Sequence record: PQ898602.1
Direction: 5' to 3' (one strand)
DNA length: 64,000 nucleotides
Shown piece after piece: positions 3,001-56,868 of this stretch. Each line of letters opens with the position of its first letter. Within the stretch, counting starts at the first letter, position 1. Made by a program: the position numbers and the translations under genes. The notes below the pieces were generated by a model. It did not search any database and was not told where the DNA came from. It was given only the letters and a program-made list of their open reading frames with translations.

Positions 3001-6000
3001 AGTTTTGCAAACAGATTCATTCCAACCAGAAGTATCTACATTCCAAATCATAACTTCTTTACTGGTGAAAAGGTAATCTATAACGTTGGTGCAAGTGGTG
3101 CTCCATTATATGTTAATAATGTTGGTGTTGCTCAATCTTTTGGATTGACTGATGGACAAGAACTCTATACAGTAAACTTGGGTCTGAATTACGTTGGACT
3201 ATCAACAGTCGGATTTACGACAAGTAGTTCTGATGGTATTGGAACAACCAAAAACTCTCTTGAGTTCTGGCCTTTCGATGACCAGTTTGGTATTGTTGGT
3301 GCTGCACATTCTCTAACTAAAACTAATCAAAGAATTACTGGTGATGTCTTTAGAAATATTGGCATTATTACAACTAAAACAGCACATGGACTTCAGATTG
3401 GTGATGATTTCAGACTGAAGTTTACTGGCAGTACGACGGATAGTTATAAAATTAAACTCGACACTATCAATAGAAAGGTACTAGTCGATGATATCTCTTT
3501 TGCGGATTCTAAAGTTGATCTGACAACAAATTCTATCGATATTTCTGGGTATTCTAAGTACAAGAAACTCAAGACAGGTGATAAAGTTGTTTATTATGCA
3601 GCAACTCCAATCACAGGACTATACAATGGAAAAACATATTATATTCTGAAAGACTCCACAGATAAGATCAAACTATGTGAGTTTGAAGCGGATATCAGTA
3701 CTACATCAGCAGTTGATCTGACTGCTGTTGGATCTGGAACTGCTCATATGTTCCATCTAATTAATCCACCTCTAGATTTCTTCAGAGGAACTATTATTGA
3801 GTTTGATGTTTCTGACACAACTCTTGCTCAACTTGATATGGTATTCTCTAAGGATGTCAATCTCACTAAGAGACTTGATCTTCTTGGAACTGACGCAGAT
3901 GGTTTTGCTATCGATAGAGATGGTCAACCTGGAACTGCAGATGCTAAGATCACTGTTGACACTAGAAGTAAGTTCGTACCAGATAGTTTCTTCTATACCT
4001 TAGTTCCTAAGGGTGCTGCAGAACAATACAAGAAAGAAATTTCTTCTGACGATAGTATTGTTTCTGCAAACAAGATTACAGTTAAACCTCATGGTTTGAA
4101 CGATGAATTTAGCGTAGTTGGTCTTTCTACAGATAATGATAAGAGACTTACATTCGTTGTTAGAAACCCCCTGAACATCGTTGAGAAATCTATTGTTGGG
4201 AATTCTACTTACGAGTATACTACGACCTCTCAGAACGTCACTGGACCTATCAGTAAGGTTAGAATTAACTTTGCTGGTAGAGGATATACAAAACTACCAA
4301 CAGTTTCCAGTATTGTTTCTGCTGCTGGTACAGATGGTGTTGTTAGATTTGAATCTTCTACAATCGGTAGAGTTGAAAGTCTAGAGAGAATTAAAGATGG
4401 ATTTGACTATCCAACAGATCCTACTCTAACACCTACTCTGAGTGTTCCAACTGTTGCAGGTATTAAGAACATTAGAACAATTGATAGAGTTGCAATTTCT
4501 ACAGGTGGTAATAATTATTCTAGTGCTCCCGAACTTGTAGTACCAGCAAAACCAAGTATTGAACTTATTGCAGTTACTCAGTTTGGTTCAGTTGTTGATG
4601 TTATTATCAACAAGAATGATACTGCACTTGCAGATCCACTCACAATTATTCCTATTCGTAATAGTAATGGATTTGATATTGATGAAATTAATCATAGTAA
4701 TGATGTAGTTACTTTTGAACTGAATAATGATCCAGAAGTTAATCCATTTATCACTCTTGGTTATGGTCAAACTGGATATACTTTCCCATTCGCAATCGGT
4801 GATGAAGTATTTGTAGAAAACTGCAGACTAACTAAAGATTCTAGAATCGCTGGTGAGAATAACTTCAACTCCATTCAGTATGATTATGCATTCTATCCTG
4901 TAACGGGAGTAAGTACTCTTAATCAAACTGTTACATGTGATCTCACTGGAATTTCTACTGGAACTCTTGGTGATTATGATGGTGAAATTACTCAAGGAAC
5001 CATCATCAACAAAAAAGACATGCCTGTCTTTAATATGGTTCTCAGTGATGATGTTAGATATCAGTCTGGGGAGAAAGTTACTGCACAATTCTTCAGTGGT
5101 AACGTAATGGAGAATGGTTGGGACAATGATGTCAACCAACTCAGAATTAACAACTCTATCGGTAACTTATTTGTCAATGACAAACTAAGAGGTGAAAACT
5201 CCAAGATTATTGGAACTGTTGATTACTTTAATACTTTTACCTTGAAGGCAAATCTTGGCGTTTCTAGAACCAAGACTCAAGTTGCAGATATGTCTTCTGG
5301 TATTCTAAATGATTACCTACAAAGTATTTCTGATAACTATTACTTCCAGAAGTTCTCTTATGAACTGAAGTCTACTATCCCATATTCTACTTGGAAGGAA
5401 TCTGTTAAATCTATTGTCCATCCATCTGGATTCAAAGAGTTCTCCAACTATAACATTGAAACTCAACCAACACTTGCAGAAGTAAATTCTGGTATTGCAA
5501 AGTCAACTTCGATGAAAGTTACTCTTGCAGATACTACACCTACTTTGAGTGTTAATATTGATAGTGAAATGAGTTTCTTCGATAAGACTAATTTCGGTCT
5601 TGTTTATGAAGATGAACCTCTTGCAGACGGAAGCGTTAAAAAGGTCTTCTTCCCTGAGGGTGTAGAACTACAACCATATATCATTAACAGAACAAATAAA
5701 GTTCTTGCAGTTGATGATATCTCAAGTCAGTTTGATGGAACTGTTACTCAACAACTTAGAGGTAGATATGCAGATGCTGCAGATTTACTTGGATTGAACC
5801 GAGACTTTATTGCAGAAGAAGTTGTTGCTAAAGTTGAGTACAACTATGTAAATGTTGGATTAAATACAGTTTACGATAGATCAAAACTTCTTTCAGAAGC
5901 AGGAAAACTCGTTGATTCTGTTGCCCATGATCTTAAGTACAATTCAAATAATGAAACTGTAGATTTTGGTCTTGAGTATTGGTCACAGGGTGGACCAACT

Positions 6001-23400: not shown

Positions 23401-24074
23401 GCATCAACGCAGTAAGTTTAGCTGGCAACGATCCATACAGAATTAGTGTTGACTACGAAGTCCCCACTAAATCGATTCAGTATGGAAATATTATCCTTGA
23501 TAGTATTGCATCCCAGTTTGATGGGGTAGCAACAAGTTTTGCATTGAAAAAGGATAATAACGCATATACCCCAGGAAATGCACAACAACTAATTGTTATT
23601 TTAGGTAATGATGCACAAAAACCAGATCAAGATTATGTAGTTTCTGGAACCAACATCGTATTCACAACAGCACCCGCTGCTTCCACTACAGTTTCGATTG
23701 TTGCACTTGCTACTACTGCAGATTTAACCAGAACTTTGAACTATGTTGTCGATAGCGGCAACCTTGCAATGACACCTGGTGATAAGGGATTTATTACTCT
23801 AGATGTAAGTGGAGTTATCGAACAACTTGTAATTTACTCTGAACAACAGGGTGATCTAGTTCTCGATATTCAAAAGGCAGATTTCACCACATACCCTACG
23901 TTTACTTCGATCTTGGGCGGTGGAAATATTCAGATGATAAATAATACGAAGCTGAAAGATGACGTTCTTACCAACTGGAACACAACTATAGTTGCTGGTG
24001 ATCTTCTTCAGTTTGATGTGGTTTCTGTCAGCAACATCACGAGATTCCTAATCTCTTTGAAATTAAAATTATAA
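23397..24074 (+). CDS. Virion structural protein
   Basis: 225 aa. Contains the DSIASQFDG..TSFAL...IVFTTAP module that also recurs in g7. ATGA overlap with the upstream ORF. Confidence 0.75.
   Translation: MSINAVSLAGNDPYRISVDYEVPTKSIQYGNIILDSIASQFDGVATSFALKKDNNAYTPGNAQQLIVILGNDAQKPDQDYVVSGTNIVFTTAPAASTTVSIVALATTADLTRTLNYVVDSGNLAMTPGDKGFITLDVSGVIEQLVIYSEQQGDLVLDIQKADFTTYPTFTSILGGGNIQMINNTKLKDDVLTNWNTTIVAGDLLQFDVVSVSNITRFLISLKLKL
23937..23943 (+). promoter_or_regulatory. Possible second late promoter for the 335-aa gene
   Basis: ATAAATA within the coding sequence, about 180 nt upstream of 24122. Confidence 0.35.
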
Positions 24075-39638: not shown

Positions 39639-39646
39639 TATAAATA
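39639..39646 (+). promoter_or_regulatory. Perfect T4 late promoter TATAAATA for g13
   Basis: Exact consensus, about 28 nt upstream of the g13 ATG. Confidence 0.85.
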
Positions 39647-40500: not shown

Positions 40501-41940
40501 ATGTCACCACTCAATTCTTACTTTTTGCAAGGATCTCCTGGGGAACAGAGACTTGTCCAGGATTTGATCAATGAACAACTCAAAATGTATGGGCAAGACG
40601 TTCTATACATGCCGAGGAAAATTATTGGCGAAAATACTGTAATTAAAGAGATTACTGCGTCTAAGTTTGACGATAGTTTTCGTATTGAAGCGTATTTGAT
40701 GAACTTTGAAGGATTCTCTGGTAACGGAGAACTCCTGACTCAGTTTGGTATCAGAAATAATGACGAGGTAAATCTTGTTATCTCAAAGGAGAGATATAAC
40801 GAGTTCATCTTACCAAAGATGAGCATGATTCCCCAATCAGAGAGGAAGTCTATAAGTAGACCCGCTGAAGGAGATCTAATCTATTTCCCTCTCGATGAAT
40901 CACTATTTGAAATCAAATATGTAGAAGGTAAGAAACCTTTTTATCAACTACAGGAACTTTATGTTTATGAACTCAGATGTGAGAGATTTGAGTTTGAAGA
41001 TGAGGTTATTGATATTCAGAATCAGGGAGATCTTGGTGAAGAGATCAACGAGTCTGTTAAGGACTTTGGAAATATCTACACTCTGAATATGGTTGGAACT
41101 GCAACAACAATTGCAGAAGCAACTGTCGGATTGAGAACTTCCGATTATACATCCAAGTCTGTTCAGTATATTGATCTAGTCAATGATGGTCATGGATATA
41201 AGTTTGCACCAAATGTTGCAATTTCTACCGCAGGACCTAATGGTGTAACTGCAACGGCAGTTGCAATCATGACGAGTAGAAATCAGAATAATACTGATCT
41301 TTCTATTGATAGAATTCTAATTACTGAACCTGGTTACGGATATACCACTCCACCAAAAGTTACCATCAGTGGTGGTCAAGGTGAAGGTGGTATTGCAACC
41401 GCAGTTATCCGTACTGGAGTCCTTGGTCTGGTTTCCATCTCAACTGGTGGAGTCGGATATACAACAGTTCCACAAGTTATCTTCAGTGGAGTTGCTAGAA
41501 CCGATAACGCAGTTGCAGAGGCAACAATCAATATCAATGGTCAGATTTCTGATGTCAGATATTCCAATGCAGGCGCTGGATACACTTCTGGTAGTGTAGT
41601 TGGTGCAGGTCAGACTATACTTCCTACAATTACATTCACCGATCCATCCAACCCACAATCGTTTGGTGATTACAAGTATGGAATGTTGGTAACTGGTTCT
41701 CAGACAGGAACTGAGGCATATGTGAAAGACTGGAATGCATACACCAGAGTTCTTAAACTTTCTTCCGTTGGAGGAAACTTTGCACTCGGTGAAGCGATTA
41801 CAGGTGCAGGTGTAAGTTATAGACTTGCAAGTATTCAGGACAATGATTTTGCGGATGAATTTGCAGACAACATCGATATCGAGTCTGAAGCAGACGCAAT
41901 TTTAGACTTCAGTGAAAGAAACCCATTTGGTGAGTACTAA
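40501..41940 (+). CDS. g14: Neck protein gp14 (with Ig-like insertion)
   Basis: 479 aa. EQRLVQDLINEQLKMYG, PAEGDLIYFP..LFEIKYVE and DFSERNPFGEY end. Confidence 0.93.
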   Translation: MSPLNSYFLQGSPGEQRLVQDLINEQLKMYGQDVLYMPRKIIGENTVIKEITASKFDDSFRIEAYLMNFEGFSGNGELLTQFGIRNNDEVNLVISKERYNEFILPKMSMIPQSERKSISRPAEGDLIYFPLDESLFEIKYVEGKKPFYQLQELYVYELRCERFEFEDEVIDIQNQGDLGEEINESVKDFGNIYTLNMVGTATTIAEATVGLRTSDYTSKSVQYIDLVNDGHGYKFAPNVAISTAGPNGVTATAVAIMTSRNQNNTDLSIDRILITEPGYGYTTPPKVTISGGQGEGGIATAVIRTGVLGLVSISTGGVGYTTVPQVIFSGVARTDNAVAEATININGQISDVRYSNAGAGYTSGSVVGAGQTILPTITFTDPSNPQSFGDYKYGMLVTGSQTGTEAYVKDWNAYTRVLKLSSVGGNFALGEAITGAGVSYRLASIQDNDFADEFADNIDIESEADAILDFSERNPFGEY

Positions 41941-41968: not shown

Positions 41969-43024
41969 ATGTTAGGAACTTATTATTACCACGAAATTTT
42001 GAGGAAAACCATTGTAGCCTTTGGTACCCTCTTCAATGACATTGAGATCAAACATAGAAACAATGCAGGTGGGGACTTTAGTATTATCAAAGTTCCCATT
42101 GCATATGGACCTGTTCAAAAGTTTCTAGCAAGAATCGAACAATCTCCTAATGTAAGAAAGGAAGTTGCGATTACTTTGCCTAGAATGTCATTTGAAATGA
42201 CTGGATTATCTTATGATCCTTCTAGAAAGTCTTCGACAATGCAGACTTTCAAAGCAATTGATAAAACTTCCAAGAATGCGACAAAGGTATTGATGCCTGT
42301 CCCATACAACATGAGTATGAGACTTTCTATTCTGTCAAAACTCAACGAGGATGCGTTGCAGATTATTGAACAGATTCTTCCAATATTCCAACCACACTTT
42401 AATATAACTGTTGATCTTGTTTCTACCATTGGAGAAAAAAGAGATATTCCAATTACTCTCAATGGTATCACTATGGATGATCAATATGAAGGAGATTTTA
42501 CAACTAGAAGAGCACTGACATATACCCTAGATTTTACAGTTAAAACTTACTTGTTCGGTCCAGTCGCAAGTTCTTCCGATGGTCTCATCAGAGAGGTTCA
42601 GGTTGACTATCATGGAGATCCTGTCAATCGTAAGAATTCTTCTAGAATGCTCAGATACAAGACTGAGGTCAGAGCAATCAAAGACTACGATAGTGACGAA
42701 ACAACTACGATCACCGAGGATCTTAACATCAGAGAAACTGCTATTGATCTGACTTATGCAGGTCAACTAGTAGAGGGTGCATACATCCAAATCGATTCCG
42801 AATCGATGAGAATTAAATCCATCACTGGAAATCAACTATTGGTTGAAAGAGGTGCAGATGGTACAACTATTGCAGAACACGCAGCAGGTACCGCAGTCAA
42901 CGTCATCGATAATAGAGACGATATTCTCATCTCTCTTGATGATGAATTTGGTTTCAGTGAGTATCGTTATGAATACGATAGTGATGGAAAAGTTTTCAGT
43001 CCAAGTAAGGGTCAAGACGTATGA
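41969..43024 (+). CDS. g15: Tail sheath stabiliser/completion protein gp15
   Basis: 351 aa. YYYHEILRKTIVAFGTLFNDI, VPIAYGP.QKFLARI, ITLPRMSFE and RDIPI.L motifs. Confidence 0.93.
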   Translation: MLGTYYYHEILRKTIVAFGTLFNDIEIKHRNNAGGDFSIIKVPIAYGPVQKFLARIEQSPNVRKEVAITLPRMSFEMTGLSYDPSRKSSTMQTFKAIDKTSKNATKVLMPVPYNMSMRLSILSKLNEDALQIIEQILPIFQPHFNITVDLVSTIGEKRDIPITLNGITMDDQYEGDFTTRRALTYTLDFTVKTYLFGPVASSSDGLIREVQVDYHGDPVNRKNSSRMLRYKTEVRAIKDYDSDETTTITEDLNIRETAIDLTYAGQLVEGAYIQIDSESMRIKSITGNQLLVERGADGTTIAEHAAGTAVNVIDNRDDILISLDDEFGFSEYRYEYDSDGKVFSPSKGQDV

Positions 43025-43452
43025 ATTTTGAAGACATCGACAAGGCTTTAGATATTGAGAGTAAACCAGTAGAAACTGAAGTTGTAAAGAAAGAGAAAAA
43101 ACCTGAAATTAAAAAAGTTCACTCTCAGGAGGAACAGATTCAGAAAGATTATGAATATACTCGTGGAAACCTTTACTCTATTATTGAAAAGGGTCAAGAA
43201 GCTATCGATGGTATTTTAGAACTTGCACAGGAATCAGACTCTCCTAGAGCATATGAAGTTGCAGGTCAGTTGATCAAGAGTGTTGCAGATTCAACTGATA
43301 AATTGATGGATCTTCAGAAGAAATTGAAGGATGTCAATAAAGAAGAAAAAGGTGCAACACCTACTAACGTTACTAATAACGCCGTATTTTTGGGTTCAAC
43401 TGCAGAGTTACAAAAGTACTTAAAGAGTTCAATGAAACCCGATACTAAATAA
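43021..43452 (+). CDS. g16: Terminase small subunit gp16
   Basis: 143 aa. DYEYTRGNLYSIIEKGQEAI..ILELAQESDSPRAYEVAGQLIK and NNAVFLGSTAELQK. Confidence 0.92.
   Translation: MNFEDIDKALDIESKPVETEVVKKEKKPEIKKVHSQEEQIQKDYEYTRGNLYSIIEKGQEAIDGILELAQESDSPRAYEVAGQLIKSVADSTDKLMDLQKKLKDVNKEEKGATPTNVTNNAVFLGSTAELQKYLKSSMKPDTK
43445..43451 (+). promoter_or_regulatory. Late promoter CTAAATA for the 724-aa gene operon
   Basis: Overlaps the g16 3' end, about 26 nt upstream of the ATG at 43478. Confidence 0.65.
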
Positions 43453-43477: not shown

Positions 43478-45652
43478 ATGGAAAGGCTTTCTTTTAAAGA
43501 GTGGCAAGTTCTGTCCGACCTAGAAGTACTCGATTCTATTCCCGAGGATTTCGAGTTTGCAATGGCTCGTGGAGAACTCAAAACTATCAAGAGATCTGTT
43601 GATAGAATCATGAAGCACCTCGGCGGCGAAGGTGATCTAGAGGCATGGGTTCAGTCTAAAATTACCAAGGCTAATGATTATCTGAATAGTGTCTCCAACC
43701 ACATGGATGGTGGTGAAGATGATACTAAGAAAGAAGTAAAAGAAGGTAAGTCAAAGTGCGACTGCGATTGTGGTAAGGTTCCTTGCGTAGAGTGTGGTGG
43801 TGATCATCACAAAAATGAACTCAAGGAAGAGAAGTGTGGTGATGGAATGTATTACTGCAAGACCAGTAAGAAGTGTAAGAAGATCCCCAAGGGTCATCGT
43901 GTCGGTAAAGACGGAATGCTTGTAAAGGGTGTCCGTTGGCAGGATTCGGATGGCGATGGTAAGTGGTACGAACCAGGTGATGATGTCTCTGAAGGCGTTA
44001 TGCCAGAACCCATTGATCCTAAGAAGCACAGGGATGCACAAAAGAAACAAAAGATGAGGAATCTTGCCATCGGCAATGAGAATCCTAATGAGAAGAAAGT
44101 TGCAGAAAAGAAAGCAGGCGGACCCAAGATGATTGGTGAAGGTGCAGTAGAAGATCTAGAAAAGGGAATGGAAACTCTTAAGTCCATTACCTATGATTCT
44201 ATTGATGGTCTGATGAAGAGAATCGCAGAAGATCATGACATCTCTACGACCAAACTTCATTACATGTTTAAAGCAAAGCATGACATGACACCCGATGATT
44301 GGGCAGAGAAGAATCTCAAAGAAGAAATGTCTAACTGGAGACAGGACTTGGATGAGAAGTGCTGGAAGGGTTATGAGAAGAAAGGTATGAAGACCATGTT
44401 TGGTAAGAGATATCCAAACTGCGTCAAGAAAGAAGAAGTTGAACAGATTCAGGAAAAACCAGGTGATGGTTATCTTGGACCAACAATGAAAGTAGGTGGT
44501 TCTGAAGTTGGTGTTCCCAACCCTATTCGTATTGCTAAGGATGCTGCAGATAATACAAACAGGGCAAACCAAAGAAAGGTAGATGCAGTTAAAGCTCATG
44601 GCGGAACCGCATCAATGCCTCCATACAAACTCCATAACAAACAAACTAGTAAAGCTAGTCAAACACTTTTTGGAATGCAGAAGCAGTCCTATGAACCACA
44701 AGGTGAGGTAATCGGTGAAGAAGGTGATAACAAAGTTACACCAATTAATAAAAAGAAGAGGATGGATGCTAAGAAGCAAGCCACCAAAGATATGAGTAAA
44801 GAACCATATGATACCAATACTGCTAGAAGGAGGGCTAAGGGTCAAGGGATCCTGGATAATCTGCTGGGAAAGCCCCCAACGACTGAAGAAGTCGTTTTAG
44901 AAAAGAGAGATGGTAAATCTGCCAAGTCCAAGGGTTATTCCCTCCGTGACTGGTTCAAAGGTGGTGGATGGGTACAAGCAGGTGGTAAGTACGATGGAAA
45001 ACCATGTGCAAAGCAACCAGGTCAAACCACAAAACCTTTCTGTCGTGATGCAGACGATCGTGCTGCAATGACTAAAGACGAGAGGGAAAAGAGAGCTGCA
45101 AAGAAACGCAGAGAAGATCCAAATCCAGAAAGAAAGGGTAAGGCAAAGATCGTCACCGCAGAGGAAGTAGTTGCCGAAAAGAAAGATGCTTGCTATCATA
45201 AGGTCAAATCACGTTACTCCGTGTGGCCTTCTGCATATGCATCTGGTGCTCTAGTCAAGTGTCGCAAAGTCGGTGCAAAGAACTGGGGCAACAAAACCAA
45301 AAAAGAAGGTTATGAATTTTCTGATTGGAGAGATGATTTCAAACCAACAGAAATTCAATCATTCGACATCGTAAAGGCAGAACCTCTGGTTGATGTTAAT
45401 TCCATCACCGAACCCGTACAATTGGCAACAGAAGATTATCAAAGACTACAATCTACTGGTAACGTTTTCTGTATAATGCTAACGTGGAGAGGTCAACCTT
45501 ATAAGGTGCAACTTTTCTTCCCAGGTGGGTCTAGACCTTCCAGAGAAGAAGTCAAGGGTGAAGTAGATAAACTTTATCCTGGTGCAGTAATCTCGCATTA
45601 CTATCCAGCTCCTACTGACCCCACTCAACCAATTGTAGTTATTCAGAGGTAA
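43478..45652 (+). CDS. Modular Lys/Cys-rich hypothetical protein (candidate internal head polyprotein)
   Basis: 724 aa made of short modules (AWVQSKITKA; KCWKGY..KG.K...GK..PNCVK; SLRDWFK..GWVQ; DACYHKVK.RY.VWPSAYASGALVKCRK) separated by [ILV]-x-E motifs. Confidence 0.8.
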   Translation: MERLSFKEWQVLSDLEVLDSIPEDFEFAMARGELKTIKRSVDRIMKHLGGEGDLEAWVQSKITKANDYLNSVSNHMDGGEDDTKKEVKEGKSKCDCDCGKVPCVECGGDHHKNELKEEKCGDGMYYCKTSKKCKKIPKGHRVGKDGMLVKGVRWQDSDGDGKWYEPGDDVSEGVMPEPIDPKKHRDAQKKQKMRNLAIGNENPNEKKVAEKKAGGPKMIGEGAVEDLEKGMETLKSITYDSIDGLMKRIAEDHDISTTKLHYMFKAKHDMTPDDWAEKNLKEEMSNWRQDLDEKCWKGYEKKGMKTMFGKRYPNCVKKEEVEQIQEKPGDGYLGPTMKVGGSEVGVPNPIRIAKDAADNTNRANQRKVDAVKAHGGTASMPPYKLHNKQTSKASQTLFGMQKQSYEPQGEVIGEEGDNKVTPINKKKRMDAKKQATKDMSKEPYDTNTARRRAKGQGILDNLLGKPPTTEEVVLEKRDGKSAKSKGYSLRDWFKGGGWVQAGGKYDGKPCAKQPGQTTKPFCRDADDRAAMTKDEREKRAAKKRREDPNPERKGKAKIVTAEEVVAEKKDACYHKVKSRYSVWPSAYASGALVKCRKVGAKNWGNKTKKEGYEFSDWRDDFKPTEIQSFDIVKAEPLVDVNSITEPVQLATEDYQRLQSTGNVFCIMLTWRGQPYKVQLFFPGGSRPSREEVKGEVDKLYPGAVISHYYPAPTDPTQPIVVIQR

Positions 45653-45657
45653 TTTAA

Positions 45658-45825
45658 ATGGACGACAAAATCGAACTCTCAAACTTAAGTAAAGCGCTCG
45701 AGTTTGAGAAACAATCTAGGGAAATTGATAAAATGACTCTAACTGAAGCGAGAGAGTTCGCAAAGTCCTACCTCAAACTTTACTTCAAGCAACAAGAAGT
45801 AGTAATGTCAATCGCAAATATGTAA
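45658..45825 (+). CDS. 55-aa NblA-like protein (possible phycobilisome degradation adaptor), not in the ORF track
   Basis: Manual translation: MDDKIELSNLSKALEFEKQSREIDKMTLTEAREFAKSYLKLYFKQQEVVMSIANM. GAGGT Shine-Dalgarno at 45646-45650. Exactly fills the gap between neighbouring genes. Aligns by eye in register with cyanobacterial NblA. Confidence 0.55.
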   Translation: MDDKIELSNLSKALEFEKQSREIDKMTLTEAREFAKSYLKLYFKQQEVVMSIANM

Positions 45826-46109: not shown

Positions 46110-47759
46110 ATGACTGATCAGGTATATCTTGGTAACCCCAATCTGAAAAAAGCCAACGTTGCAGTTGAGTTTACTCAGGAACAGGTTATTGAATTTATTA
46201 AGTGCAAAGAGGATCCCGTTTATTTTGCAAAAAACTACATCAAGATCGTTTCTCTTGATGAAGGTGAGATCCCCTTTAACATGTATAAGTTCCAAGAAAA
46301 ATTAATTGAGAACTTCCATAATAATAGATTTAATATCTGTAGAATGCCTCGACAGACGGGTAAGTCCACTACATGTGTGTCTTACCTTTTGCATTATGCA
46401 GTGTTTAATGATAATGTAAATATTGCAATTCTTGCTAACAAAGCTTCCACCGCACAGGACCTTCTCGGAAGGTTACAATTTGCGTATGAGAAGTTACCTA
46501 AATGGATGCAACAGGGTATTGTATCTTGGAACAAACGATCGCTTGAACTGGAGAATGGATCAAAGATTATCGCCGCGTCTACTTCTGCATCTGCTGTCCG
46601 TGGTGGCTCCTATAATGTCATCTTTCTGGACGAGTTCGCATTCATCCCGAATCACATTGCTGATGACTTCTTTGCCTCTGTTTATCCTACTATCTCGTCA
46701 GGTAAGTCTACAAAAGTCCTAATCGTTTCTACCCCTAAGGGTATGAACCACTTCTACCGCATGTGGCATGATGCGGAGAAAGGGAAGAACGAATATATTC
46801 CAACTGATGTCCATTGGTCTGAAGTCCCAGGTAGGGATGCGAAGTGGAAAGCACAGACCATTGCAAACACATCTGAACAACAATTCAAGGTTGAGTTTGA
46901 GTGCGAATTCCTTGGATCTGTTGATACTCTGATCTCAGCACCTAAGTTGAGGTCGATGACTTATGACGATCCAATCAAGAGAAACGCAGGGTTGGACGTT
47001 TATAAGGAACCAATTAAAGATCACAACTACATCATGACTGTTGACGTTGCTCGTGGTGTAGAAAAAGATTACTCAGCATTTACCATTTTTGATACGACAG
47101 AATTTCCATATCAACTTGTAGCAAAATATAGGAACAATCAAATCAAACCGATGTTGTTCCCAAACATCATTAAAGATGTTGCAATATCATATAATAGAGC
47201 ATTCGTTTTAGTTGAAGTTAATGACCTAGGAGAACAAGTAGGTCAGATTCTTCATATGGATCTCGAATACGATAATATCCTGATGTGTTCCATGAGAGGG
47301 CGTGCGGGTCAGATTGTTGGTCAAGGATTCTCTGGTAAAAAATCCCAGATGGGAGTCAAGATGTCCAAGACTGTCAAAAAGACAGGATGCATGAATCTCA
47401 AGACTCTGCTTGAAGATGATAAACTTATTATTAACGACTACGATATTATTAGTGAACTAACTACTTTCATTCAAAAGTCAAATTCATTTGAAGCGGAAGA
47501 TGGATGTAACGACGACCTTGCAATGTGTCTAGTTATTTTTGCATGGTTGGTCATGCAAGATTATTTCAAGGAGATGTCCGATCAGGATGTCCGTAAGAGA
47601 ATCTATGAAGATCAGAGGGATCAAATTGAAGCAGACATGGCACCATTTGGATTCATCTCTGATGGTTTAGAAGGTGGAGAAAGTTTTATAGATGAGAATG
47701 GTGATAGATGGCATATGGATGAATATGGTGATCAATCATATATGTGGGAGTTCAACTGA
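46110..47759 (+). CDS. g17: Terminase large subunit gp17
   Basis: 549 aa. YLGNPNLK, MPRQTGKST Walker A, VIFLDEFAF Walker B, VSTPKGMNHFY, VDVARGV.KDYSAF and DDLAMCL nuclease motifs. Confidence 0.98.
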   Translation: MTDQVYLGNPNLKKANVAVEFTQEQVIEFIKCKEDPVYFAKNYIKIVSLDEGEIPFNMYKFQEKLIENFHNNRFNICRMPRQTGKSTTCVSYLLHYAVFNDNVNIAILANKASTAQDLLGRLQFAYEKLPKWMQQGIVSWNKRSLELENGSKIIAASTSASAVRGGSYNVIFLDEFAFIPNHIADDFFASVYPTISSGKSTKVLIVSTPKGMNHFYRMWHDAEKGKNEYIPTDVHWSEVPGRDAKWKAQTIANTSEQQFKVEFECEFLGSVDTLISAPKLRSMTYDDPIKRNAGLDVYKEPIKDHNYIMTVDVARGVEKDYSAFTIFDTTEFPYQLVAKYRNNQIKPMLFPNIIKDVAISYNRAFVLVEVNDLGEQVGQILHMDLEYDNILMCSMRGRAGQIVGQGFSGKKSQMGVKMSKTVKKTGCMNLKTLLEDDKLIINDYDIISELTTFIQKSNSFEAEDGCNDDLAMCLVIFAWLVMQDYFKEMSDQDVRKRIYEDQRDQIEADMAPFGFISDGLEGGESFIDENGDRWHMDEYGDQSYMWEFN

Positions 47760-53593: not shown

Positions 53594-54244
53594 ATGAAAC
53601 TTATTACGGAAGAGATTTCTAATGTAAAAATTATCACTGAAGGTAAGGGTTCTAACAAGAAACTCTATATCGAAGGTGTATTTTTACAGGGTGAGATCAA
53701 GAACAGAAACGGAAGAATGTATCCCATCGAAACTCTGAGAAGAGAAGTCGAAAGATACAACGAATCCTTTGTCCAAAAGGGAAGAGCTCTTGGAGAACTC
53801 GGTCACCCCGATGGTCCAACTGTAAACCTTGATCGTGTTTCCCATAAGATCACTTCACTAGTGCAAGAGGGTAACAACTTCAAAGGAAAAGCACAAATCC
53901 TCAATACCCCTATGGGTAAGATTGCATCTTCTCTTTTAGATGAAGGTGTAATGTTGGGTGTTTCCTCCCGTGGAGTTGGTTCACTCAAGATGACAAACGA
54001 AGGTCATAAAGTTGTCGGTGAAGATTTCATGTTAGCAACTGCTGCTGATATCGTCGCTGACCCTTCCGCTCCTGATGCATTTGTATCTGGAATCATGGAA
54101 GGTAAAGAGTGGGTTTGGGAAGGAGGTATCCTTCGTGAACAACTCGCTGAAAGAACTGAGAAGAGAATTAACACACTCGTCGATCAAAAAAGACTCGAAG
54201 AGCACAAGTTAAATCTGTTCCAAGAGTTTCTTTCAAATCTATAA
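53594..54244 (+). CDS. g21: Prohead core scaffold/protease gp21
   Basis: 216 aa. MKLITEE, LYIEGVFLQ...NRNGRMYP, ALGELGHPDGP, GVSSRGVGS and DIVADPSAPDAFV. Confidence 0.97.
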   Translation: MKLITEEISNVKIITEGKGSNKKLYIEGVFLQGEIKNRNGRMYPIETLRREVERYNESFVQKGRALGELGHPDGPTVNLDRVSHKITSLVQEGNNFKGKAQILNTPMGKIASSLLDEGVMLGVSSRGVGSLKMTNEGHKVVGEDFMLATAADIVADPSAPDAFVSGIMEGKEWVWEGGILREQLAERTEKRINTLVDQKRLEEHKLNLFQEFLSNL

Positions 54245-54246
54245 TT

Positions 54247-54258
54247 TATAAATAAATA
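54247..54258 (+). promoter_or_regulatory. Tandem late promoters TATAAATA/ATAAATA for g22-g23
   Basis: TATAAATAAATA upstream of a GGAG Shine-Dalgarno and the ATG at 54290. Confidence 0.85.
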
Positions 54259-54289: not shown

Positions 54290-55444
54290 ATGTCCAGTGG
54301 TAACGATTTACAAGAAATGGAAGTAGGCACTACACAATCCAAAACCGCAGTAAACGCAGGTGCTAAGCCAGCTGAACCAATGGTAAAACCATCAGGTGCT
54401 GCTGTCGAAGACCTCGGCGGTCCTACTCCAGAAAATAGCAAGCCAGACGATGACTCTAATAAAGTCAAAGAACCTGGTGCAACCCTTAAGCAAGTTAAGG
54501 ACGTTGTAAATGCTAAGGCAAAGCCTGCAGAGCCTATGGCTGCTGCAATGAAGGAAGAGGAAGTTGAGACGGAAGTCGAAGCTGACCAGGAAGTAGTTGC
54601 TGAAGCTGAAGAGGAAGTTACCTCTGAAGTTGAAGAGGTTGTATCCGAAGAAGAGACTACCGAAGAGGAAGTCGTTTCTGAAGAAGAAACTTCTGAAGAC
54701 GAAGTTGTTGTAGAGTACAACGTCGAAGAAGATGTTGAAGCACTACTTCAAGGCGAAGAACTCTCCGAAGAGTTTAGAGAGAAGGCTAAGACCATTTTCG
54801 AGGCTGCTCTCCACGCTAAAGCCAAAGAAATCCAGACCTCTCTGGAAGAGCAGTATGCTACTGCACTTGCAGAAGAAGTTGAAGAAATCAAAGTCGCTCT
54901 GACCGAACGTGTTGATTCATACCTTGAGTATGTTTCTTCCGAATGGTTAGAAGAGAATGCTCTCGCTGTTGAGAGTGGTCTTAAGACTGAGATCACCGAG
55001 TCCTTCATGGATGGCATGAAGACACTCTTTGAAGAACATTATGTATCAATGCCTGAAGAAAAATATGATGTACTAGAGAGCATGGTACAGAAACTAGATG
55101 ATATGGAGACGAAACTCAACGAGCAGATCGAGCGCAATATTGCACTCAATGGTAAGCTCTCCGAGAGTTCTGCTGACAGAATTTTCGGTCAAGTTGCTGA
55201 AGGTCTCGCAATCTCCCAAAAGGATAAGTTTGCAACCCTCGCAGAAAGTGTTGAGTTTGAGAGTGAAGAGAACTATAGAGAGAAACTAGAAACTCTGAAG
55301 AAGTCTTACTTCTCTGAGCATGCTAGTGCTCCTGCTGACGAAACGGAAAATCTAACCGAAGAGGCAGATTTCAGCGAAGAGACCAAAGTGTCTTCTACAA
55401 TGGATGCCTATCTGAAAGCACTTTCCAACGTTACTAACAAGTGA
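54290..55444 (+). CDS. g22: Prohead core (scaffold) protein gp22
   Basis: 384 aa, Glu-rich. LSEEFREKAKTIFEAA, VDSYLEYV..EWLEEN.LAVE.G and YREKLETLKKSYF. Confidence 0.95.
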   Translation: MSSGNDLQEMEVGTTQSKTAVNAGAKPAEPMVKPSGAAVEDLGGPTPENSKPDDDSNKVKEPGATLKQVKDVVNAKAKPAEPMAAAMKEEEVETEVEADQEVVAEAEEEVTSEVEEVVSEEETTEEEVVSEEETSEDEVVVEYNVEEDVEALLQGEELSEEFREKAKTIFEAALHAKAKEIQTSLEEQYATALAEEVEEIKVALTERVDSYLEYVSSEWLEENALAVESGLKTEITESFMDGMKTLFEEHYVSMPEEKYDVLESMVQKLDDMETKLNEQIERNIALNGKLSESSADRIFGQVAEGLAISQKDKFATLAESVEFESEENYREKLETLKKSYFSEHASAPADETENLTEEADFSEETKVSSTMDAYLKALSNVTNK

Positions 55445-55503: not shown

Positions 55504-56868
55504 ATGGACCAAAATACCCAACAATTAATGGAGAAGTGGGCTCCAATCCTGGACTATGAAGGTGCAGGTGAAATCAAGGATGCTCACCGCCGTGCAGTTA
55601 CCGCACAACTTCTAGAGAACCAAGAGCGCGAAGCACATGAACAGGCTAGCTTCCTCGGAGAGGCAGCACCTGCTAACTCTGGTCACGCTCCTGCAGGATC
55701 CAACGTTGATGGATTCGACCCTGTTCTGATCTCCCTGATCAGACGCTCCATGCCTAACCTCATCGCATACGACGTATGTGGTGTTCAGCCAATGTCTGGT
55801 CCTACTGGACTGATCTTCGCAATGCGCTCCCGCCGCGATGGTCAGACTGGTGCTGAGACCTTCTACGATGAAGTAGATTCCACCTTCTCTGCACAGAACA
55901 ACAGCCGTGACCTCACTGGCGGTTTCTCTGGTGCTGCAGTTGGTATGGGTACTACCAACCAAGACGGAACCAACCCTGGTGTTCTGAACCCAACTGGTTC
56001 TGCTGATCAGACCGCATATAACGTCGGTCAGGGTATGACCACTGCTGAGGCAGAGGCACTCGGAGATGCATCTGACAATGCATTCAACCAGATGGCATTC
56101 TCGATCGAGAAAGTCACCGTAACCGCTAAGTCTAGAGCACTGAAGGCAGAATACAGCCTTGAGCTTGCACAAGACCTGAAGGCGATCCATGGTCTGAACG
56201 CTGAGGCTGAACTCGCAAACATTCTCTCCACCGAGATTCTTGCTGAGATCAACCGCGAAGTCATCAGAACCATCTACAAGACCGCTGAACAGGGTGCAAC
56301 TGCTAACGTTGCTAACGGCGGTACCTTCGACCTCGACGTTGACTCTAACGGACGTTGGAGTGTTGAGAAGTTCAAGGGTCTTCTGTTCCAAATCGAGCGC
56401 GATGCAAACGCAATCGCACAAAGAACTCGTCGCGGAAAGGGCAACACCATCATCTGCTCTGCTGATGTTGCGTCTGCTCTAACCATGGCTGGTGTTCTCG
56501 ATTACACCCCTGCACTCAACGCTAACCTGAACGTTGATGACACTGGTAACACCTTCGCTGGTGTTCTCCAAGGTAAGTATCGCGTCTACATCGATCCTTA
56601 TGCTGCAAACGTAGATTCTAACCAGTACTACGTTGTTGGTTATAAGGGTTCTAGCGCATACGACGCAGGTCTCTTCTACTGCCCATATGTACCTCTCCAG
56701 ATGGTACGTGCAGTTGGACAAGACACCTTCCAGCCCAAGATTGGCTTCAAGACCCGCTATGGTATTGTTGCTAACCCATTCGCAGAAGGTACCAACGCAG
56801 GTCTCGGTGCTCTCACCGTTAACGCTAACCGCTACTATCGTCGCGTCAAGGTTGCTAACCTCATGTGA
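55504..56868 (+). CDS. g23: Major capsid protein gp23
   Basis: 454 aa. EKWAPILD, LLENQE, FDPVLISLIRRSMPNLIAYDVCGVQPMSGPTGLIFAMR, KSRALKAEYS.ELAQDLKAIHGL and FQPKIGFKTRYG. Strong C-ending codon bias. Confidence 0.99.
   Translation: MDQNTQQLMEKWAPILDYEGAGEIKDAHRRAVTAQLLENQEREAHEQASFLGEAAPANSGHAPAGSNVDGFDPVLISLIRRSMPNLIAYDVCGVQPMSGPTGLIFAMRSRRDGQTGAETFYDEVDSTFSAQNNSRDLTGGFSGAAVGMGTTNQDGTNPGVLNPTGSADQTAYNVGQGMTTAEAEALGDASDNAFNQMAFSIEKVTVTAKSRALKAEYSLELAQDLKAIHGLNAEAELANILSTEILAEINREVIRTIYKTAEQGATANVANGGTFDLDVDSNGRWSVEKFKGLLFQIERDANAIAQRTRRGKGNTIICSADVASALTMAGVLDYTPALNANLNVDDTGNTFAGVLQGKYRVYIDPYAANVDSNQYYVVGYKGSSAYDAGLFYCPYVPLQMVRAVGQDTFQPKIGFKTRYGIVANPFAEGTNAGLGALTVNANRYYRRVKVANLM

What the first reader, a model, noticed from the sequence alone, without database searches (positions are those of the whole stretch)
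43478..45652. Candidate capsid-targeted polyprotein cut by prohead protease into many basic/Cys-rich peptides
Seen: module boundaries repeatedly end in [ILV]-x-E (EVKE, ELKE, DVSE, MIGE, NLKE, DLDE, QIQE, VIGE, VVLE, VVAE, LATE). Between them are short Lys/Arg-rich or Cys-rich units (CDCDCGKVPCVEC; KCGDGMYYCKTSKKCKK; KCWKGY...NCVK; DACYHKVK...VKCRK). An S[ND]WR motif occurs twice. The N-terminus MERLSFKEW resembles the T4 internal-protein leader MKTYQEFIAE. Known: T4 gp21 cleaves after Glu in [IL]-x-E, and the gp23 here has the matching FLGE/AAP site. Inference: a packaged polyprotein matured into a set of DNA-binding or ejected effector peptides, which would be a modular cargo system.
Basis: inference. 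Interest (0 to 1): 0.7.

Follow-up and report, generated by a model that had tools for sequence, protein, structure and literature searches.

The report
Cyanophage head-cargo polyprotein with protease-site joints
This gene of a marine cyanophage encodes a string of small, interchangeable protein modules separated by the cutting motif of the phage's own head-maturation protease, which makes it the likely cyanophage counterpart of the T4 "internal proteins" that are packed into the capsid with the DNA.

Summary
The window is Synechococcus phage S-SCSM2R.

**Anatomy**
- The gene lies between the small and large terminase genes.
- It has no Pfam domain, and AlphaFold gives mean pLDDT 39.5, so it looks like small folded units joined by disordered linkers.
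- More than 7,900 metagenomic relatives carry the same modules in different orders.

**Evidence for packaging and cleavage**
- Across relatives, module N-termini are preceded by [I/L/V/M]-x-Glu even when the upstream neighbour differs. Examples are 51/51, 78/90 and 16/16, against a background of 1.8% per position.
- Upstream of the C-terminal beta domain, Glu is kept in 131 of 141 representatives.
- Genes in the same slot in other cyanophages begin with MKTFQEFILE-type leaders, nearly the T4 capsid-targeting sequence MKTYQEFIAE.
- Homologues were found by mass spectrometry in S-SM1 and S-SCSM1 virions.
- The phage has an S77 prohead protease, and its gp23 carries an FLGE/AAP site.

**Limits**
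- Cleavage, location inside the head and module function are all untested.

**Verdict:** a new variant of a known kind, namely CTS-targeted, gp21-processed head proteins. Confidence is about 0.6.

The parts
43478..45652 (+). ORF117 (SSCSM2R_117), 724 aa, pI 8.9, 81.5 kDa: candidate head-cargo polyprotein
   Evidence: PHROG 727 E 6e-54 and five other unknown-function PHROGs, no Pfam hit
43478..43546 (+). aa 1-23 acidic leader (MERLSFKEW...SIPE), proposed capsid-targeting/propeptide ending in I-P-E
   Evidence: Leader class M..[ST]F[KT][DE]W is found in 72 of 268 relatives. [IL]xE before D[FY]EF.MAR is kept in 64/64, and in 7/7 in a different context. It is the only ORF in the window, in six frames, that matches a CTS-like leader pattern.
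43547..43744 (+). aa 24-89 helical module (DFEFAMARGELK...)
   Evidence: AF2 helices 33-48 and 54-76, pLDDT about 55. The module is internal in other relatives, where it is preceded by YSDWRxE[LI]FE.
43745..43828 (+). aa 90-117 five-Cys knuckle (CDCDCGKVPCVEC)
   Evidence: variants such as CPVCGNDPCQC occur in relatives; the upstream VKE site is not conserved
43829..43993 (+). aa 118-172 three-Cys beta module (CGDGMYYCKTSKKCKK...)
   Evidence: Best-modelled island in the full-length model, pLDDT 63-71, four short strands. It is N-terminal in many relatives.
43994..44140 (+). aa 173-221 basic unstructured segment ending in MIGE
   Evidence: pI 9.6-9.7; 89% nucleotide identity to S-SSM7 over about 110 bp; the junction before [GD]AVE.LE is kept in 12/13 different contexts
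44141..44356 (+). aa 222-293 helical module followed by the portable leader MSNWRQDLDE
   Evidence: AF2 helices 241-291. The leader Ar-S-[DN]-W-R-x-[DE]-[LIF]-x-E precedes at least 10 different modules in relatives.
44357..44455 (+). aa 294-326 two-Cys beta-hairpin module (KCWKGYEKKGMKTMFGKRYPNCVKK)
   Evidence: [IL]xE directly upstream in 78/90 different contexts, and 12 more with IEE two residues further up. 94-97% nucleotide identity to three distant phages. AF2 hairpin 299-317.
44456..44719 (+). aa 327-414 module KPGDGYLGP..., ending in VIGE
   Evidence: [IL]QE upstream in 16/16 different contexts
44720..44902 (+). aa 415-475 basic segment ending in VVLE
   Evidence: I[GR]E upstream in 12/12 different contexts; pI 9.6
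44903..45178 (+). aa 476-567 very basic two-Cys module (KRDGKS..GYSLRDWF..GKPC..FC..), 25 K/R
   Evidence: [IV]xE upstream in 51/51 different contexts; present in 117 of 120 relatives
45179..45433 (+). aa 568-652 two-Cys module DACYHKVKSRYSVWPSAYASGALVKCRK plus the FSDWR segment, ending in LATE
   Evidence: Upstream joint is VAE, or [IV]xE shifted by one residue, in most relatives, and VATE in 32. Weak sub-threshold DUF5872 hit, E 0.01. 83-87% nucleotide identity to P-TIM68 and S-MS29.
45434..45649 (+). aa 653-724 beta-beta-alpha-beta domain
   Evidence: 371 clusters at E <= 0.001. AF2 with 141 sequences gives pLDDT 79. Upstream P1 Glu in 131/141 and P3 V/I/L/M in 96/141. It is a stand-alone CTS-bearing gene in S-SCSM1, S-RIM2 and S-SKS1.
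53594..54244 (+). gp21 prohead protease (Peptidase_S77), the proposed processing enzyme
   Evidence: Pfam PF03420 E 4e-37. Aligns with T4 gp21 5JBL at E 3.5e-26. Motifs GELGHP at aa 67 and GVSSRG at aa 122.
54290..55444 (+). gp22 scaffold (T4_CASP), dense in [ILV]xE sites
55651..55662 (+). FLGE (followed by AAP) in gp23, the expected maturation cleavage site
43021..43452 (+). gp16 small terminase (left border of the slot)
46110..47759 (+). gp17 large terminase (right border of the slot)

Best explanation
ORF117 is a late-expressed cargo polyprotein of the T4-type prohead. The proposed mechanism has four steps, all of them inferred:
1. The N-terminal 23-residue leader, a long form of the T4 capsid-targeting sequence (CTS), and possibly the internal Ar-S-[DN]-W-R...[LI]-x-E leaders, bring the precursor into the gp22 scaffold core.
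2. After shell assembly the S77 protease gp21 cuts after Glu at the conserved hydrophobic-x-Glu joints. The best-supported sites are after residues 23, 221, 293, 326, 414, 475, 567 and 652.
3. This releases about eight to ten small, mostly basic units with pI around 9 or above, several of which carry a Cys pair.
4. These units stay with the DNA in the mature head and probably leave with it at infection.

What is shown here: the modular anatomy, module shuffling, conservation of the joint motif, CTS-type leaders on positional orthologues, virion presence of homologues, and a protease with its catalytic motifs in place.

The architecture looks like a fusion of formerly separate 'leader + module' internal-protein genes. 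The C-terminal beta domain of ORF117 is a separate CTS-bearing gene right next to the polyprotein gene in S-SCSM1, S-RIM2 and S-SKS1.
For: 1. **Joint motif.** [ILVM]xE immediately precedes unrelated modules whatever lies upstream: 51/51 for KRDGKS, 78/90 for KCWxGY, 16/16 for KPGDGY, 12/12 for EGDNK, 12/13 for [GD]AVE and 7/7 for D[FY]EF. The background rate is 1.8% per position.
2. **Beta domain.** In 141 non-redundant instances the residue just upstream is Glu in 131, and P3 is V/I/L/M in 96, while the flanking positions vary. The Glu lies in the unstructured leader outside the fold.
3. **T4 specificity.** T4 gp21 cleaves after L/I-x-E (PMC9026906). This phage's gp21 is an S77 protease aligned with T4 gp21. 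gp23 has FLGE|AAP, and gp22 is dense in such sites.
4. **Leaders.** Canonical 10-residue leaders (MKTFQEFILE, MKTFADFINE, MKTFKQFISE and others) start 10 of 268 relatives and match 0 of 3516 internal Met positions. P0156 and P0220 occupy the same gp15-gp16-X-gp17 slot as ORF117. Small genes beside the polyprotein gene in five phages start MK[TSN][FYL].QF..E, and 137 phage records hold that gene. T4's CTS is MKTYQEFIAE; its residues 4 and 7 matter for targeting and 8 and 10 for processing.
5. **Virion presence of homologues.** T4-GC119 was detected in S-SM1 with 13 peptide counts, and SSCSM1_29 is annotated 'virion protein' on mass-spectrometry evidence.
6. **Disorder.** AF2 gives pLDDT 39.5 and pTM 0.19 with only small folded islands. 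The ESM Atlas model has pLDDT 0.53.
7. **Distribution.** In the phage collection the family is confined to T4-like cyanomyoviruses.
8. **Operon context.** The gene lies in a co-directional late structural cluster, with TATAAATA 36 bp before gp13.
Against: - There is no direct evidence of cleavage in any phage.
- ORF117's own leader is not the canonical 10-mer, and many relatives start directly with a Cys module and have no leader.
- Sites 89 and 282 (and the extra ITE at 645) are not conserved, 32 relatives have VATE and a few AAG at the DACY joint, and the beta-domain joint in ORF117 itself has Ala at P3.
- The Syn9 homologue was annotated but not detected in virions.
- The 13 peptide counts in S-SM1 resemble a low-copy protein rather than the roughly 1000 copies of T4 IPs.
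- The joint motif could be inherited along with each module without being used today.
- The protease-peptide complex prediction gave no answer.
Confidence: 0.6

Rival explanations
1. ORF117 is an uncleaved, largely disordered multi-module virion protein. It would be a head-internal DNA-condensing protein or a neck-associated accessory protein, in which the acidic hydrophobic-x-Glu stretches are only linker composition.
For: Shotgun mass spectrometry of homologues cannot tell whole protein from fragments. The gene sits next to neck and terminase genes. The protein is Lys-, Glu- and Asp-rich, so x-E tripeptides are common.
Against: The Glu is kept at one exact position before unrelated modules (93% before the beta domain) while neighbouring linker positions vary. 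Positional orthologues begin with a T4-type cleavable leader.
Confidence: 0.17
2. The joints are evolutionary scars. Formerly separate leader-bearing internal-protein genes were fused, and the leader remnants persist or serve as recombination joints, but only the N-terminal leader, or none, is still processed.
For: There is a fusion/fission relation between the ORF117 C-terminal domain and stand-alone CTS genes. The portable YSDWRxELxE leader resembles a decapitated CTS. Module-sized islands of 83-97% nucleotide identity indicate recent exchange.
Against: P3 and P2 residues change (ILE, ITE, VLE, ISE; LGE, LNE, LDE, IVE) while the pattern is kept. That points to selection at the protein level rather than DNA homology or recent common descent.
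Confidence: 0.15
3. The protein is not packaged in the head. It would be a non-structural protein, or a contaminant co-purifying with virions, whose Cys-pair mini-domains act in the infected cell or outside it and are cut, if at all, by another Glu-specific protease.
For: The S-SCSM2R authors note that some proteins found in their virion preparation may be carried over. Cys pairs suggest an oxidising setting. There is no evidence for ORF117 itself in the S-SCSM2R virion.
Against: Two independent virion proteomes detected homologues. CTS-type leaders are present. The family is restricted to phages with T4-type heads. The sequence shows no signal peptide or hydrophobic segment.
Confidence: 0.08

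Closest known systems
T4 internal proteins IPI, IPII, IPIII (and the polymorphic IP loci of T-even phages)
   Same: The phage has a T4-type prohead with gp21, gp22 and gp23. The 10-residue N-terminal leader is almost the same (MKTYQEFIAE in T4, against MKTFQEFILE, MKTFKQFMSE or MKTYNQFVLE here), with an aromatic at residue 4, Phe at residue 7, a hydrophobic residue at 8 and Glu at 10. The mature parts are basic, small and highly diverse between related phages, while only the leader is conserved (PMC3012670; PMC9026906).
   Different: The mature parts share no sequence similarity with T4 IPs. ORF117 is a 724-residue string of about ten modules with internal cut sites, not one leader plus one protein. 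Its own leader is a 23-residue variant. The locus lies between g16 and g17. Copy number and ejection are unknown.
T4 prohead core proteins gp22, gp67 and gp68
   Same: They are cut by gp21 at several L/I-x-E sites into small peptides, some of which stay in the head (PMC9026906).
   Different: Those are scaffold and size-determining proteins that are mostly degraded and expelled. ORF117 is not homologous to them: the T4_CASP domain hits gp22 at 54290-55444, not ORF117. Its pieces are conserved, Cys-paired mini-domains rather than acidic debris.
Inner-body and ejection proteins of giant phages phiKZ, 201phi2-1 and SPN3US
   Same: These are many head-internal proteins processed C-terminal to Glu by a gp21-related protease, with several redundant sites per protein, and they are packaged with the DNA and ejected (PMC9026906).
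   Different: Their motif is S/A-x-E rather than hydrophobic-x-E. They are large proteins with removed propeptides, not shuffled mini-modules. There is no sequence relation.
Adenovirus core precursors pVII and pX(mu) (from general knowledge, not tested here)
   Same: Basic DNA-condensing peptides are released inside the capsid by the virion maturation protease.
   Different: The virus, protease and motif are unrelated, and these are not modular polyproteins.

Membership tests
T4-type CTS-targeted, gp21-processed head internal proteins (functional class) | Encoded by a phage with a T4-type prohead: S77 protease gp21, gp22 scaffold, gp23 shell, gp20 portal | tested here: met
   Pfam Peptidase_S77, T4_CASP and Gp23; T4 gp21 structure 5JBL at E 3.5e-26; portal annotated
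T4-type CTS-targeted, gp21-processed head internal proteins (functional class) | About 10-residue N-terminal capsid-targeting sequence of the MKTYQEFIAE type | tested here: inconclusive
   ORF117 starts MERLSFKEW...IPE (23 aa), keeping only the Ar-x-E-Ar core. Positional orthologues P0156 and P0220, and neighbouring small genes in five phages, carry the canonical 10-mer.
T4-type CTS-targeted, gp21-processed head internal proteins (functional class) | L/I-x-E cleavage site(s) used by the prohead protease | tested here: inconclusive
   The motif is present and conserved at module joints. Actual cleavage cannot be tested with these tools, and the complex prediction gave no answer.
T4-type CTS-targeted, gp21-processed head internal proteins (functional class) | Present in mature virions, inside the head | tested here: inconclusive
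   Homologues were detected in S-SM1 (13 counts) and S-SCSM1 virions and not in Syn9. The status of ORF117 in S-SCSM2R could not be read. Location within the virion is unknown.
T4-type CTS-targeted, gp21-processed head internal proteins (functional class) | Bound to DNA and ejected into the host | not testable with these tools
   Only composition is available: pI 8.9 overall, and most predicted fragments at pI 9.1-9.8
T4 IPI / IPII / IPIII sequence families | Sequence similarity of the mature part | tested here: not met
   No Pfam hit for ORF117 or its nine pieces above threshold; only unknown-function PHROGs match
PHROG 727 / T4-like gene cluster 119 of Sullivan et al. 2010 | Profile match and syntenic position upstream of g17 | tested here: met
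   phrog_727 E 6e-54. The S-SM2, S-SSM7 and S-SM1 homologues are annotated T4-LIKE GC 119.
Pfam DUF5872 / DUF6321 / DUF5661 module families | Score above the Pfam gathering threshold | tested here: not met
   In ORF117 only DUF5872 is hit, at 16.9 bits against a cutoff of 27.5. Relatives do carry DUF6321, DUF5661 and DUF5872, and according to the Atlas also DUF192.
T4 gp22-type scaffold (T4_CASP) | T4_CASP domain | tested here: not met
   The domain is found in the gene at 54290-55444, not in ORF117

The most novel reading that the evidence does not exclude
The g16-g17 slot of marine cyanomyoviruses would be a combinatorial effector cassette. Dozens of interchangeable mini-proteins, each preceded by a capsid-targeting-derived leader and a protease site, are strung into one precursor. 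The prohead protease releases them inside the capsid and they are injected with the DNA as host-takeover or anti-defence factors. Recombination at the conserved joints would then give ocean phage populations thousands of cargo combinations; more than 7,900 variants are already in metagenomes. This would be the polyprotein counterpart of the polymorphic T-even IP loci.
Probability: 0.3. Interest if true: 0.85.

Novelty: new variant of a known kind. Interest (0 to 1): 0.68.

Why it matters
T4-like cyanophages are among the most abundant viruses in the ocean, yet their genome annotations list no internal head proteins. If this reading is right, three things follow:
- The T4 capsid-targeting sequence and the gp21 cut rule are conserved from coliphages to marine cyanophages.
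- A very large family of "hypothetical" virion proteins gets a concrete, testable role. The family has more than 7,900 relatives and matches PHROG 727 and the gene cluster T4-GC119.
- A new architecture appears, in which a multi-cargo polyprotein has its modules reshuffled at protease-site joints.

It also offers a natural set of leaders and cleavable linkers for packaging foreign proteins into cyanophage capsids. Finally, it gives a list of small, conserved, Cys-paired modules to screen for anti-defence or DNA-condensing activity in laboratory phage-host pairs.

Tried and rejected
- **Pfam.** A scan of the whole protein and of nine pieces found nothing above threshold.
- **Full-length AlphaFold2.** A run with a 104-row fragment alignment gave a low-confidence model (pLDDT 39.5), unusable for fold search. 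A first alignment (A1) was discarded because MAFFT misplaced the shuffled fragments.
- **Protease-peptide complex.** gp21 was folded with a 24-residue joint peptide. The tool returned 'no answer' (score 0.00), which is not evidence either way.
- **Fold search of the beta domain.** There was no significant PDB match. The best hit was T7 Gp2 at E 0.25 and is only a lead. BFVD returned only cyanophage relatives.
- **C-terminal anchor idea.** The beta domain as a fixed C-terminal anchor was rejected: it is N-terminal in S-PRM1 and stand-alone elsewhere.
- **S-SCSM2R virion proteome.** No supplementary files are held for the S-SCSM2R paper, so whether ORF117 is its one unknown-function virion protein is open. 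The S-SCSM1 supplement has no peptide-level data.
- **Module catalogue.** In-silico cutting followed by single-linkage clustering merged most fragments into one cluster (134 clusters, 16 with five or more members). It gives only a rough lower bound on module diversity.
- **Spurious hits.** P0133 and P0136 in the representative search are repetitive and unrelated, and were left out.
- **Literature.** Searches found no paper describing a capsid-targeting sequence or internal proteins in cyanophages.
Full report
**Identity and context**

The window matches Synechococcus phage S-SCSM2R (PQ898602.1, 244 kb, a T4-like cyanomyovirus) at 100% identity; window position equals record position minus 62000. 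The finding corresponds exactly to the annotated CDS SSCSM2R_117, 'hypothetical protein', at 43478-45652 on the + strand, 724 aa.

The gene lies in a co-directional late structural cluster, in this order:
- gp13
- gp14 (40501-41940)
- gp15 (41969-43024)
- gp16 small terminase (43021-43452)
- ORF117
- a 55-aa ORF
- a 91-aa ORF
- gp17 large terminase (46110-47759)
- gp18, gp19 and gp20
- two small ORFs
- gp21 protease (53594-54244)
- gp22 scaffold (54290-55444)
- gp23 (55504-56868)

A TATAAATA box lies 36 bp before gp13 and another 43 bp before gp22. This fits late transcription but is not statistically enriched.

**Check of the observation**

In the single sequence [ILV]xE occurs 14 times against 8.6 +/- 2.6 in composition-preserving shuffles (p about 0.03). 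On its own that is a weak signal.

**What the protein looks like**

- It has no Pfam domain. It matches PHROG 727 (E 6e-54) and five other PHROGs of unknown function, each over a different part.
- It is Lys-rich (100 K), with pI 8.9.
- AlphaFold2 with a 104-row alignment gives mean pLDDT 39.5 and pTM 0.19. Confidence is moderate only in small islands: helices 13-70, a Cys3 beta unit at 121-150, the CWKGY hairpin at 294-320, and the C-terminal beta-beta-alpha-beta unit.
- The ESM Atlas model of the same sequence has pLDDT 0.53.

So the protein is beads on a string, not a globular protein.

**Relatives and shuffling**

The word-indexed search returned 7,909 relatives among 8,000 scored candidates. 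Local alignments show the same modules in different orders and numbers. One relative, for example, has query parts 1-352, 452-616, 98-218 and 636-723 in that order.

In sequenced phages the family is confined to cyanomyoviruses: 371 records, almost all Synechococcus or Prochlorococcus phages. It usually sits in the g16-g17 slot, as in S-SM2, S-SM1, S-SCSM1, S-RIM2, S-SKS1 and S-MbCM6, but lies elsewhere in S-SSM7.

Other members carry modules that ORF117 lacks, including DUF6321, DUF5661, DUF5872 and DUF192.

At the DNA level, ORF117 shares only module-sized islands of 90-130 bp with otherwise distant phages, at 83-97% identity.

**The joints**

This is the main result. I anchored on the first residues of each module and separated occurrences whose upstream ten residues differ from the query's. 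[ILVM]xE then immediately precedes the module as follows:

| Module start | Different-context occurrences with the motif |
|---|---|
| KRDGKS..GYSLRDWF | 51/51 |
| KCWxGY | 78/90, and 12 more with IEE two residues upstream |
| KPGDGYLGP | 16/16 |
| EGDNK | 12/12 |
| [GD]AVE.LE | 12/13 |
| D[FY]EF.MAR | 7/7 |

The motif's background rate in these proteins is 1.8% per position. The tripeptides vary (ILE, ITE, VLE, ISE; LGE, LNE, LDE, IVE, IDE), so the pattern is kept at the protein level, not as a fixed DNA joint.

For the DACY module the motif is present at the same or a one-residue-shifted position in most relatives, but 32 have VATE.

For the C-terminal beta domain I collected 371 clusters by an exhaustive HMMER search and aligned 141 representatives. 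The residue that corresponds to E652 of ORF117 is Glu in 131 of 141. The residue two positions before it is V, I, L or M in 96 and T in 23. All other leader positions are variable. The AlphaFold2 model of this domain (pLDDT 79) places that Glu in an unstructured leader outside the fold. About half the instances also end in [VTAIM]-G-E.

Three more (172, 210, 251) have only same-context relatives and give no independent information.

**The leader**

T4's capsid-targeting sequence is MKTYQEFIAE (PMC8442874). Residues 4 and 7 matter for targeting and residues 8 and 10 for processing (PMC9026906).

- Ten of 268 collected relatives begin with M-[KR]-[TSN]-[FYLW]-x-x-[FYW]-x-x-[ED]: MKTFQEFILE, MKTFADFINE, MKTFKQFISE, MKTFSQFLLE, MKSFSEFIYE and others. 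None of 3,516 internal Met positions in the same proteins fits that pattern.
- Two of these (P0156, P0220) lie on contigs in the same gp15-gp16-X-small ORF-gp17 slot as ORF117.
- In P0220 the leader runs straight into a module (INE|SKSGDSSLRDWF) that is internal in other members behind an equivalent joint.
- In five sequenced phages a small gene next to the polyprotein gene starts in the same way: MKTFKQFMSE (S-SCSM1_30), MKSYKQFMSE (S-RIM2), MKNFKQFLSE (S-SKS1), MKTLKQFLKE (S-SM2) and MKTYNQFVLE (S-PRM1). The S-SCSM1_30 type occurs in 137 phage records and is aligned from residue 1.
- The mature part of S-SCSM1_30 is the same beta domain that forms the C-terminus of ORF117. That is a fusion/fission relation.
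- ORF117's own N-terminus (MERLSFKEW...SIPE|D) belongs to a second, longer leader class found in 72 of 268 relatives. It keeps the Ar-x-E-Ar core (FKEW against YQEF).
- ORF117 is the only ORF in all six frames of the window that fits a CTS-like leader pattern.
- Inside the proteins, a portable element Ar-S-[DN]-W-R-x-[DE]-[LIF]-x-E precedes at least ten different modules. In ORF117 it is MSNWRQDLDE|KCWKGY.

**Virion evidence**

- In Sullivan et al. 2010 (PMC3037559, Table S8), T4-GC119 was detected in purified S-SM1 virions with 13 peptide counts. It was annotated but not detected in Syn9, and not present in S-PM2.
- The S-SCSM1 family member (SSCSM1_29, 517 aa) is annotated 'virion protein' on the basis of mass spectrometry.
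- The S-SCSM2R paper reports 23 virion proteins, one of unknown function, but no supplementary files are held, so its identity could not be read.

**The enzyme**

- gp21 of this phage is a Peptidase_S77 (E 4e-37) and aligns with T4 gp21 (5JBL, E 3.5e-26).
- The motifs GELGHP and GVSSRG are present.
- T4 gp21 cuts after L/I-x-E (PMC9026906).
- gp22 here is dense in such sites, and gp23 has FLGE|AAP.

**Interpretation**

The most economical reading is that ORF117 is the cyanophage counterpart of the T-even internal proteins. Those are described as a highly diverse set sharing only the CTS (PMC3012670). Here they are built as a polyprotein whose modules are released by the prohead protease.

The anatomy, the conservation and the homologues' virion presence are shown. 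Targeting, cleavage, retention and ejection are inferred.

The predicted products are mostly basic (pI 9.1-9.8), and five of them contain a Cys pair or a Cys cluster. Their functions are unknown. The beta domain has no significant structural match.

Against the reading:
- Many relatives lack any leader.
- Some joints deviate from the motif.
- Peptide counts suggest modest copy number.
- The motif might be an inherited scar.

I put the polyprotein-cleavage model at about 0.6. The rivals are an uncleaved disordered virion protein (0.17), scars of gene fusion with at most N-terminal processing (0.15), and a protein that is not head-packaged (0.08).

**Novelty**

Full-text searches found no description of a capsid-targeting sequence, internal proteins or a cargo polyprotein in cyanophages. 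The kind is known: CTS-targeted, gp21-processed head proteins, and multi-site processing in T4 core proteins and giant-phage inner-body proteins. The multi-module, shuffled polyprotein form and its presence in marine cyanophages appear to be new.

Noticed in passing
window 45658-45825 (+): The 55-aa ORF just downstream of ORF117 is annotated 'NblA' in GenBank. Here it gives no Pfam NblA hit, only weak unrelated hits, and matches unknown-function PHROG 27081.
   Followed up: no
window 54209-54241 (+), C-terminal tail of gp21: The last residues of the protease read ...LNLFQEFLSNL. The FQEF[IL] core is the same as in the capsid-targeting leaders (MKTFQEFILE). The protease may enter the scaffold core through the same contact.
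   Followed up: no
metagenomic relative P0230 (623 aa): There is an intein-like insertion of about 240 residues inside the DACY module, between ...WPSAYA and SGAVVKCRK. P0156 keeps a short remnant (GNGVITITGN) at the same place. This suggests the module is a conserved homing target.
   Followed up: no
window 44016-44127, 44353-44443, 45182-45308: Three module-sized islands of ORF117 share 83-97% nucleotide identity with otherwise distant cyanophages (S-SSM7, S-8S55/56, SynMITS9220M01, P-TIM68, S-MS29), while the rest of the gene has no DNA match.
   Followed up: partly
window 40501-41940 (+), gp14 neck protein: The 479-aa gp14 homologue has a C-terminal extension of about 250 residues with repeated G-x-G-Y-T..P motifs. 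The extension matches PHROGs of large virion, fibre and baseplate proteins. Other cyanophages have shorter gp14 proteins.
   Followed up: no
L006 (S-RIM2 KX349271.1) 3851-5224: The annotated family member Sn250709_101 starts at an internal Met. The 102 codons upstream are open in frame and encode further family modules, so the gene is probably longer than annotated.
   Followed up: partly
L008 (S-SM1) 3091-3627; absent from the window: T4-GC403, a 178-aa protein encoded between g16 and the polyprotein gene in S-SM1, S-RIM2 and S-MbCM6, gave 60 peptide counts in S-SM1 virions. S-SCSM2R has no such gene in this slot.
   Followed up: no
window 39639-39646 and 54247-54254 (+): Exact TATAAATA boxes (T4 late-promoter type) lie 36 bp before gp13 and 43 bp before gp22. 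A third is at 24070. The count is not above chance.
   Followed up: partly
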